A DNA stretch of 63,854 nt, counting the filler, from Octopus bimaculoides (taxonomy: Eukaryota): the NCBI RefSeq assembly GCF_001194135.2. It is 7 parts of 7 records of this genome, joined end to end, with 100 filler letters (N's around TTAATTAATTAA, not from the genome) between each part and the next. Parts side by side here need not be neighbours in the genome. Positions count along the whole stretch, not along the records: positions 11,307 to 20,374 come from NC_068981.1; 6 more parts are not named here. One strand, given 5' to 3'. Every line of letters begins with the position of its first letter. Position 1 is the stretch's first letter. The notes under the pieces are model-generated. The model saw only the letters and a list, made by a program, of their open reading frames with translations, was not told where the DNA came from and did no database searches. The position numbers were made by a program, and so were the translations under genes. Positions 11,307 to 19,270 of this stretch are shown here, one piece after another.

Positions 11307-11344
<38 letters not shown>

Positions 11345-11345
<1 letters not shown>

Positions 11346-12272
11346 CACCCAGGCCTATTCCCCATTTTTTTAGGAGGGGATAACCACAATCAGGCACACA
11401 CCAAGCATACTATTCATTTCCTAACTCAAAGAGGCGAGTCCCGTCCTATGCTTTTGTCTAGGCGTAGAACGCAACCCTCAATATCAGTAGCGGAGCCCGA
11501 CAGTATGTGCTGGTTTAGCCCCGCGGCATCATGCTGGTTCTGTACCCTTTTAAGGAACATCAAATTCACTCATCCGTCGACAAACACTCTCAGCATTCCT
11601 ATCATTTATAAACTATCTTCCCTTTCGAACACCTTTCACCACCAAAGCTTTCCTCAGTCTATCCATCCGCACAGGCCGAGGTCTGCCACTGATATTTCTG
11701 CCTTCATCACACTCCTTGTCATGCGTTCCTCATCCATACTCTCCGTGTGGCAAAACCACATCAACATTCGTCTATCCATTTTGGTTGTTGGTTTTTCTCT
11801 CACTCCTGCTCGCCTACGCACTTCTCCATTCCTTATCCAGCCCATCCATGCCACACCAACTATAGCCTTTAGGCATCTCATCTCAACCACATCTAGTCGC
11901 CTCTTTTCAGCCTCTCTAAGCCCCCACGTCTCTGCACCATATAACATTGTCGTCACAATCATGCCCTTATACACACCTCTTCTCGCTTTCATACTCAATC
12001 GTTTTGTATATCCCACTTCCTCAACCAACGGTCACATGTGATCCCAGATATTAAAAACACTCACCCCTTCTAACATCACACTATTTATACTCACATCATC
12101 CTACCAGCCATTCCATCTCTCGAACATCTCATCACCTTACTTTTAGCTACATTCACTTTCACTTTCCTCCTCTCACACACGCTTTCACATTCTACCACCA
12201 GTCTCCTCAGTTGTTCTTCCGAATCCGCCACCAGTGCTGTATCATCAGCAAACAACAACTGACTCACCAATA
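11345..12272 (-). mobile_element. RTE-clade LINE, RT C-terminal half plus 3' UTR (frameshifted)
   Basis: VSQLLFADDTALVADSEEQLRRLV..CERRKVKVNVAKSKVM and TMLYGAETWGLREAEKRRLDVVEMRCL..IRNGEVRRR. Confidence 0.9.
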
Positions 12273-12282
12273 GACATACATC

Positions 12283-12320
<38 letters not shown>

Positions 12321-12580: not shown

Positions 12581-12938
12581 AACATTGCTTGTTTTCACTT
12601 TTTCGATATCAGTGAAGAATTTCACTGGAAAAATATACACAAGGTTGCCAAGAATTTATATCTCTCATCGAAGGTCGGTAGCTATCGGACGCTGACGAAG
12701 GGAAATAACCCTGAAACCCGGGTCCGTTCGTGCTACGATCACGATGAGAGGGATAACTTCCCTTGGCAAAACAAACAGGACACAGTAGTGTGTCGATAAG
12801 CCAGCTGGAGGAGATGTCCTCCTGGGGCTAAAGCAACAGTAACATCCACCCCTAGGGGTCAGACACACTTAAGTGGCAATACACTTCACTTTATCGTGTA
12901 GTTACTGTTAATACTTCATTTAGAGAATTAACATTGCT

Positions 12939-12939
<1 letters not shown>
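12581..12939 (+). mobile_element. Putative non-LTR retrozyme unit (349-nt period)
   Basis: Contains the hammerhead and many nested stems; AACATTGCTT repeated at 12581 and 12930; upstream side lies in an assembly gap. Confidence 0.6.
12678..12736 (+). ncRNA. Type I hammerhead ribozyme with palindromic stem III; predicted cleavage 3' of C12724
   Basis: CUGACGA 12692-98; stem II AGGG/CCCU with loop AAAUAA; GAAA 12713-16; palindrome ACCCGGGU 12716-23; GUC triplet; stem I CGGACG/CGUUCG extended by GUAGC/GCUAC. Confidence 0.9.
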
Positions 12940-12970
<31 letters not shown>

Positions 12971-14099
12971 AAGATAAATTTTATTTTATTCAACGCGTAG
13001 ATACTGAACAGTATGTATATAAAGGATAACATTTCTGCTTTTTATGCTTTTAGAAAAAAAATAACGGATTTTATCCTTTGTAAATATACTGTCAGTATCT
13101 ACGTGTTGAATAAAATTTATATTTCTACTTGTTCTAGAATACATTTCAACGCTTCGAAAACATGTACACATGAAGAATTCCTCCCAGAACTCTTGAGCAC
13201 TAATGAAAATTATTCAACAAAGAACAAACAACAAAAGTTGGGCAAATCCAATTTTTTTGGTGGTTGGAAATTACCAAAATCATTAAGATACTACGGTAAG
13301 AAACCAAAATTGTAACCAAACACGTGTGCCAGAAGCCGTAGTTATTCGAAAAACAATTGGCTGCAAATCTAGAGATAAATTAGGCTTCAAATAGCTGAAA
13401 TTTTGCCTACAGACAAAAGACCTTGAGAACTCCGAAGCCGATTCGATAACTGTCATCAAATGTTGAGAATTGCATTGAATATTTCAGCAATCTTCTAATA
13501 CATAGATTCTCGCCGACAAAATAATGGATATTTACAAATGAAACACCGCCACGCAAAAGAATTTTTACTAATGCCATTATCAGAAAATAGGAGAATTACT
13601 ATACAGCTCACAATTAAATAAACCTGAAATCAAAGGAGCCAGACACTCTCCTCAAGAGATAAGACAATGAGGATAGAGTGAAAACGTGCGCACTATATTA
13701 CACTTTCTTTCCAGCCTTAATCATTCCATCTAATAGCAAGAAAGGCACACTTAGTAAATGTATCATTGATGTCGTCATGTATGATATCAGTAATGTGATC
13801 GAATAGGCATAATAGGATTATAGCAGAACAATCGTTAACTAGTTGCGTGAAATCGAGACAAGAGAAAGCAGTAGACTCAGAATAATATCTTACATTTCGT
13901 CATATCACACTTTCTAAATACTCAGGATAATGGGAGCCGAATCCCTAGAATCAGCAATATTAATATCAGAAATTATTTGCAACGCTAGAAGTCATACTTG
14001 TAAAAATAGAAAGCGACAATAGTTGGTGTATGTAGATATCATTGGAAAGCATGCGGGTGAGAAAGCAACATTGAAGATCTACCACATGGAAGCTATGCA

Positions 14100-14611: not shown

Positions 14612-14656
<45 letters not shown>

Positions 14657-15880: not shown

Positions 15881-16142
15881 TAATAAATGCCTCTCCGCTA
15901 AAAGACTGAAGGCTTCCTATTCCTGAAAAAAGTTAACTCTACATATTTAATAATCAATGCCAATGGGAAAGAACAAAAACGTATAGGTTTGTAGCGTAAT
16001 AATGTACGAAGATATGTGTGTGTGTGTGTGTATGTGTGTGTGTATGTGCGTGTGTGTGCGTGTGTGTGTGTGAAGAGAGAGTATTACGTGTTCGCGCGGG
16101 TTTCTATGTGTGTCTAAATATATGTGTGTGTGTGTGTGTGTG

Positions 16143-17360
16143 TGTAGAGTGCAATGATTAAATTGTCGCCGTCTTATATTTGTAATTCAGCGCATGCGCA
16201 TTGTTTGTTTTTGAATTTATCGACTTCACAATGTAGTAGGGTCAGCTGGACACCGTCATTGAGAAAAACAGCATCATAACGTAATTCACTTTGCCAGAAA
16301 TTTGGAAACGACATGCTGTACTGCTTGGCATTCGCGCCGAAAGCTACCACATGAACATTTCAGAATGTTTGGGGATCAAATTGAGGACAGCACAGGGCAT
16401 ACGGAAAACTCTCTCTGATGAAAGAAACCAACCTCCTGAATTTGTTGGTGAGATCCAGGCCATGATTGACAACGATCATTCCAAGTCAATCGGGTGCGTT
16501 GTCAGGGACATCGGAGTGTTTGTGCTTCTTATCAAGCAGATAATATATGAAGACATTCAGTATTCCTCATATAAGATGAGAAAGGGTCAATTTTTATCCG
16601 AAGCCATCAAGGACAAGAGGAAAGACCACGCCACGCAGCTTTTGAACAGACTCAAGCATCCCCTCCAACCAAACCTGTTTTGGCTTTGCTGAGTCGAGAA
16701 AAATTTCTACCAGGATCAGATGGTGAACACACAGAACAACTGTCGGCTTGCCGTTTCCGCAAAATATATACCGAGAGTGATATACCGAGTGTTGGAGTGA
16801 TCACTAGTGATGGCGAGATTATGCCACCATTTATCATCCCATACGGCCTCAGACTCAACAGGCAGGCGCACATCTAGTGCCTGGAGGGAGTATTGCTGCC
16901 CAGGGTCAAGAGGGTGGCTGCTGGAAGACACTATATCAAGCAACAGGACACTGCACCATGCTACACAAGCAGGAGGACCCAATCATGGCTGTCAGACAAT
17001 TTCTGCGACCCTAACATCTGGCCACCTAACTCCGCAGACTGCAAACCCCTTGATTATTATGTGTGGGGCGCAGCTGAGCGAGAGACCAGCACAAATTCCG
17101 TGTAACACCAAATATAAACTAAAGGCAGGTGTTATGGCAGCTCTCACTAACGTAATCAAGGAGACCGTCCAGAAGAGTTTAAGAGATTCCGAAGTCATCT
17201 GGAGGCCATGATTGAAGCCAATAAAGATTATATTAAACAAATTTACTCTTCAGTATTTCAAGATATTTTAATGTAAATTTGGTAAATATATCTGTTAAAA
17301 TGAGATGTCAGTGTTATTTTCATGTTTGTGTCGTTTAGACGACAACTTACTCACCGCACC

Positions 17361-17365
<5 letters not shown>
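16143..17365 (+). mobile_element. Tc1/mariner DD37D (maT)-like transposon, both ends present
   Basis: QQDTAPCYTSRRTQSWLSDNFCD-PNIWPPNSADCKPLDYYVWG; imperfect TIR pair TAGAGTGCAATGATTAAATTGTCG and GACAACTTACTCACCGCACCCTGTA. Confidence 0.9.
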
Positions 17366-17396
<31 letters not shown>

Positions 17397-18131: not shown

Positions 18132-18192
<61 letters not shown>

Positions 18193-18816
18193 ATATTAAC
18201 GAATACGTGAAGCTTATACCTGTCCCCTGTGTGTATGTGTCGGTCGTCACAAAAATGTGTGTATACTGACAGACAGAAACCGTCATTCATCGGCCTAACG
18301 TATGTAACGAAAGCGCGAACACAGAAAATGTGACGTTATCGTCGTTGTGCTGGTGGTGAGGGTGGGGTGGGGTAAAAATGTCGTTTACAATAGGTGAGTA
18401 AAAGCAAAATGATAATCTTAAACATTTGTAATACAAATAAGTGAATGAAAATATATTTTAGTTCGTAGCCAAAAGCTTACTGAATCTTTTGATACCTCAT
18501 ACGTCAAAAACGGTAACTCGGTTTTGGAATGCATAAGGAACATACTCGCACGCACGCACACACATACATACACACACACACACATACACACACATACACA
18601 TGCAAACTCTCTTTTATATATATATAGAGAGAGAGACAGATATACAATGGAGGTGAACACCTTTCTCCATGTGATCGGCTCGAAAAATTGTTAAGAGACT
18701 ACGATATTTTACTGCTTTTCTGAACAAGGAACCAATGGTAGTATTAATTCACAAATAAAGAAATTATATCCACCAATGCGTTGTTGAGCACTCATCATTT
18801 TCATCGTTCAACATTT

Positions 18817-18855
<39 letters not shown>

Positions 18856-19270
18856 TGTATACTACTCTATGACACGTTGCCACATAACTCTGTATATAGT
18901 ATATTTAACAATAATTGAATAGCTCTAAGGGGTTACGTAAGAACTTATGGCATAATCACACAGCTTTCGTCAATTTCATTTGATATGCATAGTGCAGCAA
19001 TCAATATAATGTATCATATATTATATTCACTTCATTTCAGATTTTGGTGCCATTAAGTTAATTAAAGTACGTATGGTCAATTATATTTCAATATTAAGTT
19101 CTATACGTGATTTCCATTTCATGAATTATAATTTTGTATGGTTATGAGAATATTATGCGAGAATTGCATAACACGTCATATTTCTTTGATTCTAGTTTCT
19201 GTGAAAACTATCAGGAAATATGAGACTAGATAAAATTAAAGTAATGTTACTCTCTGTATCGCATAGGAAG

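What the first reader, a model, noticed from the sequence alone, without database searches (positions are those of the whole stretch)
12678..12736. Intact minimal type I hammerhead ribozyme with a self-complementary stem III
Seen: every catalytic core nucleotide is present and correctly ordered. CUGACGA (12692-98), a 4-bp stem II AGGG/CCCU with loop AAAUAA, GAAA, the 8-nt palindrome ACCCGGGU, GUC, and stem I CGGACG/CGUUCG extended across a UAU/U internal loop by GUAGC/GCUAC. Established: minimal type I hammerheads with palindromic stem III, which can cleave as dimers, mark Penelope-like terminal repeats and the non-LTR retrozymes described in cnidarians, mussel and salamanders. Inference: an active self-cleaving RNA in a cephalopod. 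I know of no characterisation of it, but cannot search.
Basis: partly seen in the sequence, partly recalled or inferred. Interest (0 to 1): 0.92.

Follow-up and report, generated by a model that had tools for sequence, protein, structure and literature searches.

The report
Hammerhead ribozyme in a retrozyme-like repeat
The window holds a complete, classical animal-type hammerhead self-cleaving RNA motif inside a ~340-base non-coding, strongly folded repeat unit, which looks like one more copy of the known "retrozyme" mobile elements rather than a new kind of thing.

Summary
A descriptor scan finds it once in the piece, against 2 hits in 2000 shuffles. A covariance model built only from four experimentally validated retrozyme hammerheads (coral, mussel, two axolotl) matches 12686-12730 end to end at 25.8 bits, E about 4e-6. 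Rfam reports no hammerhead family even at E<=10, which I could not explain.

The architecture is the canonical metazoan type I form, not the Penelope "minimal" form: helix I of 6 bp, a 3x1 internal loop, a 5-bp closing stem, helix II of 4 bp, and an 8-nt palindromic helix III like the mussel's. The only deviation is A10.1-U11.1 in place of G-C.

The motif caps a ~110-nt hairpin inside a 339-349-bp non-coding unit with 44% GC. That unit folds far better than shuffles (z about -5.5), is bracketed by a 10-nt direct repeat, and abuts a (TA)n tract. An assembly gap hides the upstream side.

The best reading is a solo or array-terminal monomer of a non-LTR retrozyme-like element. Catalysis, circular RNA, paralogues and the host organism could not be tested. 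This is a new member of a known kind, of modest interest.

The parts
12678..12736 (+). Complete type I hammerhead motif, including the closing stem of helix I
   Evidence: Sequence; descriptor hit; geometry table
12686..12730 (+). Hammerhead proper: helix I 6 bp, core, helix II, helix III. This is the region matched end to end by model R1
   Evidence: 25.8 bits, E 3.6e-6, all 13 modelled pairs standard
12692..12698 (+). Core strand C3 U4 G5 A6 C7 G8 A9 (CUGACGA)
   Evidence: Sequence
12699..12712 (+). Helix II hairpin AGGG-AAAUAA-CCCU, 4 bp with a 6-nt loop. The base pair at 10.1-11.1 is A-U, not the usual G-C
   Evidence: Sequence. Same dimensions as axolotl Ax330 GGUC-CAAAAA-GGCC
12713..12715 (+). 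Core G12 A13 A14
   Evidence: Sequence
12716..12723 (+). Helix III segment ACCCGGGU, an 8-nt palindrome. It forms 2 bp plus a CCGG loop in a monomer, or an 8-bp intermolecular helix in a dimer
   Evidence: Sequence; dimer MFE structure; compare mussel ACGCGCGU and axolotl ACACGUGU
12724..12725 (+). Predicted cleavage site: C17 at 12724, scissile bond 12724|12725
   Evidence: Position in the hammerhead consensus (inference from family knowledge; not assayed)
12652..12760 (+). Long hairpin that extends helix I, for example 12661-12670 pairing with 12742-12751. The hammerhead sits at its tip
   Evidence: MFE -47 kcal/mol, z = -4.5, 0 of 200 shuffles as good
12591..12929 (+). Body of the non-coding repeat unit: 339 bp, or 349 bp counted with one copy of the direct repeat. 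GC is 0.44
   Evidence: Circular MFE -106 to -109 kcal/mol, z about -5.5, against -1.3 to +0.6 for three same-size control segments of the window. No Pfam hit, tRNA or pol III box
12581..12590 (+). Left copy of the direct repeat AACATTGCTT. It starts at the very edge of the assembly gap, so its true left limit is unknown
   Evidence: A 10-mer recurs 150-500 nt downstream at about 6e-4 of positions in this piece
12930..12939 (+). Right copy of the direct repeat AACATTGCTT. It is either a target-site duplication or the end of a second, tandem unit
12939..12970 (.). (TA)n microsatellite directly abutting the unit. This is the kind of site that Penelope-like endonucleases are reported to prefer
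   Evidence: TRF; PMC8557442
12321..12580 (.). Assembly gap (260 N) that hides whatever lies 5' of the unit: another unit, a Penelope-like ORF, or plain flank

Best explanation
The 339-349-bp segment 12591-12939 is one copy of a small, non-coding, non-autonomous retroelement of the non-LTR retrozyme kind. It is either a solo monomer flanked by a 10-bp target-site duplication, or the last unit of a tandem array whose remainder is lost in the assembly gap. It carries a canonical metazoan type I hammerhead ribozyme.

Proposed mechanism:
1. The unit is transcribed, probably by read-through.
2. The hammerhead folds, either alone (2-bp helix III capped by CCGG, helped by contacts between loop 1 and loop 2) or more stably by pairing its ACCCGGGU palindrome with a second copy to give an 8-bp helix III, the double hammerhead.
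3. It cuts its own backbone after C12724, leaving a 2',3'-cyclic phosphate and a 5'-OH.
4. Unit-length RNA released from multimeric transcripts is joined by a host RtcB-type ligase into a highly base-paired circular RNA.
5. That RNA is copied and inserted by the RT/endonuclease of an autonomous Penelope-like element, here next to a (TA)n tract.

Shown here: the motif, its match to validated retrozyme ribozymes, the dimer-favouring energetics, the exceptional foldedness of the unit, the direct repeat and the (TA)n junction.

Inferred: transcription, cleavage, circularisation, mobilisation and copy number.
For: - A covariance model built only from coral, mussel and axolotl retrozyme hammerheads that were shown to self-cleave (sequences, alignment, model) matches 12686-12730 over its full length: 25.8 bits, E 3.6e-6, every pair standard. 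The best full-length score in 83 kb of related animal DNA is 10.9 bits.
- The geometry beyond the model also agrees: helix I 6 bp, a 3x1 internal loop (U-A-U opposite U, against U-G-C/U and U-U-C/U in axolotl), and a 5-bp closing stem. Helix III is an 8-nt palindrome, as in the mussel.
- The dimer MFE is the double hammerhead, 4.3-5.5 kcal/mol better than two monomers. The monomer's active fold lies 7.6-8.2 kcal/mol above its MFE, similar to the active mussel ribozyme at 7.4.
- Non-G-C pairs at 10.1-11.1 are tolerated in nature: the validated axolotl Ax353 ribozyme has U.U there.
- Unit size (339-349 bp), GC (0.44), absence of an ORF, LTR or tRNA, and strong self-pairing (z -5.5; controls -1.3 to +0.6) match the published description of non-LTR retrozymes: 170-400 nt, GC <45-50%, highly self-paired.
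- There is a 10-nt direct repeat at both ends, with a background of about 6e-4 per position, and a direct junction with (TA)n, a reported Penelope-like insertion preference.
Against: - Only one copy is visible, and no paralogue or orthologue could be retrieved from any reachable collection. Family-level conservation and covariation are therefore untested.
- Tandem arrangement, the defining layout of retrozymes, is not shown. Only 10 nt of a possible preceding unit are seen before the gap.
- Rfam's hammerhead models give nothing at E<=10.
- A10.1-U11.1 departs from the highly conserved G-C pair and may lower activity.
- A stable alternative pairing (CGGAC 12686-90 with GUCCG 12722-26) sequesters the cleavage site in the monomer MFE.
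- At whole-genome scale a 25.8-bit hit to a 44-nt model could arise about once by chance (extrapolated from the rough E-value). The case therefore leans on the added context.
Confidence: 0.6

Rival explanations
1. The segment is the 3' pseudo-LTR of an autonomous Penelope-like element, whole or truncated. Its RT/GIY-YIG reading frame lies in, or was lost at, the assembly gap, and the hammerhead is that element's own processing ribozyme.
For: - Penelope-like elements always carry type I hammerheads with short palindromic helix III in their pLTRs, and these are thought to act as dimers.
- They insert next to microsatellites, including (TA)n.
- Retrozymes are reported to be derived from pLTRs, so the two kinds are hard to separate on sequence alone.
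- A stop-free frame of 72 codons runs from the gap edge into the unit.
- Penelope elements exist in cephalopod genomes.
Against: - The ribozyme does not have the pLTR "min-HHR" architecture of a long helix II, a short helix I, a bulged base after A9 and no helix III. It has the canonical retrozyme layout instead.
- The open frame has no Pfam match, GIY-YIG or other.
- The only RT nearby is LINE-type and lies on the opposite strand.
- The stated gap of 260 nt is too small for an ORF of about 2.5 kb.
Confidence: 0.17
2. It is a genuine hammerhead-bearing repeat but a dead copy. The motif looks intact, but A10.1-U11.1 and the competing alternative fold make it catalytically inert. The locus is neither transcribed nor mobile.
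For: - A-U at the normally G-C 10.1-11.1 pair (conservation stated).
- The monomer MFE is not the active fold, which carries a 7.6-8.2 kcal/mol penalty.
- A solo genomic copy has no partner in cis for dimer formation.
- Monomers are regarded as non-transposing offspring.
- The neighbourhood is a graveyard of broken LINE and mariner copies.
Against: - All 13 core positions and all 20 helix pairs, including the 5-bp closing stem, are intact. That is unexpected after long neutral decay.
- G-C to A-U needs two changes that preserve pairing.
- An active axolotl ribozyme has a U.U mismatch at the same place.
- The active mussel ribozyme shows a similar fold penalty.
Confidence: 0.15
3. It is a chance occurrence: an AT-rich hairpin that happens to spell the hammerhead consensus, with no evolutionary relation to ribozymes.
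For: - Rfam finds no hammerhead.
- There is a single copy and no homologues.
- One of 100 preselected core-plus-palindrome loci reaches 25.4 bits with my model.
- Extrapolating the E-value to gigabases gives about one chance hit per genome (inference).
Against: - About 0.001 hits are expected per piece by shuffling.
- Features not used in the model all agree with validated ribozymes: the 3x1 internal loop with U/U, the 5-bp closing stem and the further 10-bp helix.
- The unit matches retrozymes in size, GC content and foldedness, and has a flanking direct repeat.
- The 25.4-bit control was drawn from roughly a terabase by demanding 18 fixed bases, and it lacks helix I.
Confidence: 0.05
4. It is a domesticated single-copy hammerhead serving a host transcript, for example within an intron or UTR, like the amniote intronic hammerheads.
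For: Such exapted type I hammerheads exist. Only one copy is seen here.
Against: No exon or gene is detectable in the 9-kb piece. The flanking direct repeat, the (TA)n junction and the repeat-rich surroundings point to a mobile element insertion.
Confidence: 0.03

Closest known systems
Non-LTR retrozymes of metazoans (Cervera & de la Pena, NAR 2020, PMC7229834), especially the Mytilus galloprovincialis 350-390-bp repeats and the axolotl 330/350-bp repeats
   Same: - Canonical type I hammerhead: helix I 6 bp, helix II 4 bp with a 5-6-nt loop, helix III of 2 bp plus a palindromic tetraloop.
- The helix III segment is an 8-nt palindrome of the same form as the mussel ACGCGCGU.
- The 3x1 internal loop and closing stem are as in the axolotl.
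- Unit of about 340-350 bp, GC 0.44, non-coding, strongly self-paired.
- The double hammerhead is predicted as the dimer ground state.
   Different: - Only one unit is seen; tandem repetition is not shown.
- There is no primary-sequence similarity outside the ribozyme, as is usual between species.
- A10.1-U11.1 base pair.
- Loop 2 is AAAUAA.
- Expression as circular RNA is untested.
- The host is said to be a cephalopod, for which no retrozyme description was found.
Minimal hammerheads of Penelope-like element pLTRs (Cervera & de la Pena 2014, PMC4209133; Lunse, Weinberg & Breaker 2017)
   Same: - Type I topology.
- Palindromic 15.2-16.2 region that allows dimer formation.
- Association with retroelement repeats and microsatellite targets.
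   Different: The pLTR variants typically have helix II of 6-8 bp, helix I of 2-5 bp with no defined loop 1, an extra base between A9 and 10.1, and little or no helix III. No RT/GIY-YIG frame is visible here.
Satellite 2 / newt and Schistosoma Sm-alpha hammerheads (classical type I; Epstein & Gall 1987; Ferbeyre 1998; Martick & Scott 2006)
   Same: - Helix I of 6 bp followed by an asymmetric internal loop.
- Helix II of 4 bp with an A-rich 6-nt loop (Sm-alpha CAAAUA from my memory; AAAUAA here).
- A weak palindromic helix III and dimer-dependent cleavage in newts.
- A repeat unit of about 330 bp.
   Different: Sm-alpha has a tRNA-like pol III promoter, whereas no tRNA-like sequence or A/B box is found here. 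Whether the loop nucleotides reproduce the tertiary contacts was not tested.
Rfam RF00163 Hammerhead_1 loci annotated in the giant squid genome (235 loci; PMC6962438)
   Same: Type I hammerheads in a cephalopod genome.
   Different: Those loci passed Rfam's gathering score, and this one does not reach even E<=10. Their sequences and repeat context are not published in the text I could read.

Membership tests
Hammerhead ribozyme, type I | Conserved core C3 U4 G5 A6 N7 G8 A9 / G12 A13 A14 / A15.1-U16.1 / H17 (not G), in that order | tested here: met
   CUGACGA 12692-98, GAA 12713-15, A12716...U12723, C12724 (descriptor)
Hammerhead ribozyme, type I | Three helices around the core, with helices II and III closed and helix I open (5' and 3' ends leave through helix I) | tested here: met
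   Helix I 6 bp plus a 5-bp closing stem, helix II 4 bp, helix III 2 bp plus tetraloop (or 8 bp in a dimer). All 13 modelled pairs are standard
Hammerhead ribozyme, type I | G10.1-C11.1 base pair (highly conserved, not absolute) | tested here: not met
   The pair is A12699-U12712. A validated axolotl retrozyme ribozyme has U.U here and still cleaves, so I treat this as a deviation, not an exclusion
Hammerhead ribozyme, type I | Loop 1 / loop 2 tertiary contacts of natural type I ribozymes | tested here: inconclusive
   The geometry is identical to the axolotl ribozymes (6 bp, then a 3x1 internal loop starting with U, single U opposite; A-rich 6-nt loop 2). The specific contacts cannot be verified from sequence
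Hammerhead ribozyme, type I | Mg2+-dependent self-cleavage 3' of H17 | not testable with these tools
   Needs in vitro transcription or RNA end mapping
Rfam RF00163 Hammerhead_1 (operational membership) | Score at or above the family's gathering threshold | tested here: not met
   No hammerhead family is listed at E<=10 on 9 kb or on 141 nt.
Retrozyme-type hammerheads (model R1 from four validated ribozymes) | Significant full-length match to a covariance model of experimentally active coral, mussel and axolotl retrozyme hammerheads | tested here: met
   25.8 bits, E 3.6e-6, model positions 1-44 of 44. Controls
Non-LTR retrozyme | Head-to-tail tandem repeats of a 170-400-bp unit, each with a type I hammerhead | tested here: inconclusive
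   One full unit, plus 10 nt identical to the unit's end at the edge of a 260-N gap. This is compatible with a tandem array or with a target-site duplication around a solo monomer
Non-LTR retrozyme | Non-coding, no LTR/PBS/PPT, low GC (<45-50%) | tested here: met
   GC 0.44. No Pfam match in any open frame. No internal repeats or similarity to the rest of the piece
Non-LTR retrozyme | Unit RNA predicted to be highly self-paired | tested here: met
   Circular MFE z about -5.5. Validated retrozymes give -0.8 to -3.2 and window controls -1.3 to +0.6
Non-LTR retrozyme | Many genomic copies; expressed as linear and circular RNA | not testable with these tools
   No genome or transcriptome of the source organism was reachable. 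All paralogue hunts were empty
Penelope-like element (pLTR with min-HHR) | Adjacent ORF with telomerase-like RT and GIY-YIG endonuclease | tested here: inconclusive
   None is found in the readable sequence. The upstream side is hidden by the gap. The nearby RT is LINE-type on the other strand
Penelope-like element (pLTR with min-HHR) | Minimal ribozyme architecture: helix II 6-8 bp, short helix I, bulged base after A9, helix III absent or 1-2 nt | tested here: not met
   Helix II is 4 bp, helix I is 6+5 bp with a defined loop 1, and the helix III segment is 8 nt

The most novel reading that the evidence does not exclude
The family would be invisible to Rfam's Hammerhead_1 model because of its A10.1-U11.1 pair and loop-less palindromic helix III. 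It would be expressed as abundant ~350-nt circular RNA, with cleavage gated by dimer formation, since the monomer's ground state hides the cleavage site. That would extend circular-RNA retroelements to a lineage where none has been characterised, and would show that standard annotation undercounts them.
Probability: 0.3. Interest if true: 0.45.

Novelty: new member of a known kind. Interest (0 to 1): 0.3.

Why it matters
If confirmed, this adds one more animal lineage to the hosts of hammerhead-bearing circular-RNA retroelements.

It also gives a concrete example of a well-formed type I hammerhead that the standard Rfam scan does not report. That matters for how completely such elements are counted in genome annotations.

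It does not change what is known about how hammerheads or retrozymes work. The class, its dimer-dependent cleavage and its link to Penelope-like elements are all published.

Tried and rejected
- **Rfam.** I scanned the 9-kb piece and a 141-nt slice at E<=10. No hammerhead family was listed, only weak miRNA-like hits on microsatellites and hairpins. No positive control was possible.
- **Paralogues via spurious ORFs.**
  - The 67-aa minus-strand ORF across the ribozyme found nothing in the 5.8-billion-protein index.
  - It found only low-complexity repeat proteins in the 1.84-billion representative library.
- **Paralogues via neighbouring transposons.**
  - The LINE ORF gave 3 weak ENA hits.
  - The mariner-like frame gave transposases of at most 52% identity.
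  - Five 20-kb loci from long contigs of ENA assembly ERZ21867824 share the mariner at about 66-75% nucleotide identity. They hold no hammerhead and nothing similar to the unit.
- **Pattern scans.**
  - Core plus palindrome in the viral and metagenome collections gave about 100 loci, none with helices I and II.
  - Family-specific patterns in GTDB genomes and viral contigs gave zero hits.
- **Penelope ORF.** The open frames in and upstream of the unit have no Pfam hit.
- **SINE-like origin.** No tRNA was found and there are no A/B boxes within 2 mismatches.
- **Similarity to other retrozymes.** There is none to coral, mussel or axolotl retrozymes outside the ribozyme.
- **Organism.** No tool result names it. 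One window ORF was looked up by exact sequence and is not on record, and neither transposon protein search returned a self-hit.
- **Literature.**
  - No paper on retrozymes or characterised hammerheads in cephalopods was found.
  - Lunse et al. 2017 and de la Pena & Garcia-Robles 2010 are not held.

Full report
**Observation**

The sequence at 12678-12736 (+) reads GUAGC-UAU-CGGACG-CUGACGA-AGGG-AAAUAA-CCCU-GAA-ACCCGGGU-C-CGUUCG-U-GCUAC. All 13 canonical core positions are there: C3-A9, G12-A14, A15.1, U16.1 and H17 = C. Helix I has 6 bp with one G.U. It is followed by a 3x1 internal loop and a 5-bp closing stem. Helix II has 4 bp and a 6-nt loop. The helix III segment is an 8-nt palindrome. 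The predicted scissile bond is 12724|12725.

**Chance**

- A descriptor I wrote (helix I >=5, II >=3, III >=2, A15.1-U16.1, H17 not G) finds only this site on either strand of the piece. It gives 2 hits in 2000 dinucleotide-preserving shuffles.
- A scan of the metagenome and viral collections for the linear core plus the same palindrome returned about 100 loci. None has both helix I and helix II.
- Rfam release 15 reports no hammerhead family at E<=10, on the whole piece or on a 141-nt slice. I could not run a positive control, so I record this as unexplained negative evidence.

**An independent membership test**

The supplement of Cervera & de la Pena 2020 (PMC7229834) prints four genomic retrozyme constructs whose hammerheads were shown to self-cleave: one coral, one mussel and two axolotl. 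I aligned only those four ribozymes and built a covariance model with the textbook structure.

- The model matches 12686-12730 over all 44 positions at 25.8 bits, E 3.6e-6, with every modelled pair a standard pair.
- The next best hit in the piece scores 9.1 bits.
- In 83 kb of related animal DNA the best full-length score is 10.9 bits.
- Among 100 loci preselected for 18 fixed core and palindrome bases, scores are mostly 11-20 bits. One reaches 25.4, and it lacks helix I.
- Extrapolating the rough E-value to gigabases gives about one chance hit per genome. The model score alone is therefore not decisive.

**Features outside the model**

These features agree with the validated ribozymes.

- The window has helix I of 6 bp, an internal loop 5'-UAU/3'-U, and a 5-bp closing stem.
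- The axolotl ribozymes have 6 bp, UGC/U or UUC/U, and closing stems of 5-8 bp.
- The helix III segment ACCCGGGU has the same form as mussel ACGCGCGU and axolotl ACACGUGU.
- This is what Cervera & de la Pena 2014 call the canonical metazoan type I hammerhead: helix I 6 bp, helix II 4 bp, helix III 1-2 bp capped by a 2-4-nt palindromic loop. It is not their Penelope "min-HHR", which has a long helix II, a short helix I, a bulged base after A9 and no helix III.

**Energetics**

- The monomer MFE is not the active fold. CGGAC 12686-90 pairs with GUCCG 12722-26 and hides the cleavage site.
- The active fold lies 7.6-8.2 kcal/mol higher. By the same measure the penalties are 7.4 for the mussel ribozyme (about 0.1 per min as a monomer), 3.6 for coral, and 2.3 and 0.5 for axolotl.
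- For two copies, the MFE is the double hammerhead with an 8-bp helix III. It is 4.3-5.5 kcal/mol better than two monomers, as for coral and axolotl Ax353.
- Dimer-assisted cleavage is thus plausible, and monomer activity is not excluded.

**Context**

- The ribozyme caps a ~110-nt hairpin at 12652-12760, z = -4.5.
- The rest of the unit is also structured, z = -2.9.
- Folded as a circle, the 339-349-nt unit has z about -5.5. Three same-size control segments of the window give -1.3 to +0.6, and the validated retrozymes give -0.8 to -3.2.
- The unit has GC 0.44, no ORF with a Pfam match, no tRNA and no pol III boxes. It has no similarity to the rest of the piece or to the published retrozymes outside the ribozyme.
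- AACATTGCTT occurs at 12581-90 and at 12930-39. Such a 10-mer recurrence has a background of about 6e-4 per position in this piece.
- The left copy starts at the edge of a 260-N assembly gap, so it may be longer. It is either a target-site duplication or the tail of a preceding tandem unit.
- The right copy runs straight into (TA)16, a target type reported for Penelope-like endonucleases.
- Left of the gap lies a LINE-type RT remnant on the opposite strand, which is unrelated.

**Interpretation**

The most likely reading is a solo or array-terminal monomer of a non-LTR retrozyme-like element. Such elements are described as 170-400-bp, low-GC, non-coding, highly self-paired units with canonical type I hammerheads. 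They are transcribed, self-cleaved, circularised by a tRNA ligase and probably mobilised by Penelope-like elements.

Rivals:
- a Penelope pLTR whose ORF is hidden by the gap;
- a real but inert relic;
- chance;
- a domesticated ribozyme.

**What could not be done**

- No paralogue or orthologue was reachable by any route.
- The organism could not be verified.
- Cleavage and circular RNA need the bench.

**Novelty**

Type I hammerheads in animal repeats, their dimer mode and retrozymes are all published. The giant squid genome paper lists 235 Rfam Hammerhead_1 loci. I found no paper that characterises a cephalopod retrozyme. This is a new member of a known kind, of modest interest. The small added point is that Rfam's scan missed it.

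Noticed in passing
window 12985-13115: A near-perfect ~130-nt hairpin (inverted repeat with arms of about 48 bp) lies immediately after the (TA)n tract. Its MFE is -59.6 kcal/mol and z = -14.5. It gives a sub-threshold Rfam MIR1444 hit (41 bits against a gathering score of 80). It looks like a small foldback or MITE-like insertion and has no sequence relation to the ribozyme unit.
   Followed up: partly
window 11654-12320 (minus strand): A remnant of a LINE-type reverse transcriptase (FADD motif; Pfam RVT_1, E 8e-7), cut off by the N gap. The closest database proteins are only 48-57% identical and come from short ENA contigs.
   Followed up: partly
window 16291-17211 (+): A frameshifted, stop-interrupted Tc1/mariner-like transposase remnant. 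It is 52% identical at protein level to intact 349-373-aa transposases.
   Followed up: partly
L104-L108 (ENA assembly ERZ21867824, contigs of 140-314 kb): A "metagenome" assembly holds long AT-rich (29-35% GC) animal-like contigs. These carry the same mariner family at about 66-75% nucleotide identity, so a related animal genome sits in that assembly. I could not identify it.
   Followed up: no
window 11307-11345, 12283-12308, 14614-14653, 16015-16145, 17364-17393, 18133-18190, 18549-18601, 18819-18858: There is an unusually dense set of dinucleotide microsatellites, (AT)n, (CA)n and (GT)n. They account for all the weak miRNA-family hits in the Rfam scan.
   Followed up: no
window 12581-12796 (+, frame of 12581): A stop-free stretch of 72 codons runs from the gap edge through the ribozyme. 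It has no Pfam match and is probably fortuitous. It would matter if the gap hides a Penelope-like ORF.
   Followed up: partly
window 12686-12726: The 5' strand of helix I (CGGAC) is complementary both to its proper partner and to GUCCG spanning the cleavage site. This gives a stable inactive alternative fold that the dimer resolves. It could be a conformational switch or a coincidence.
   Followed up: partly
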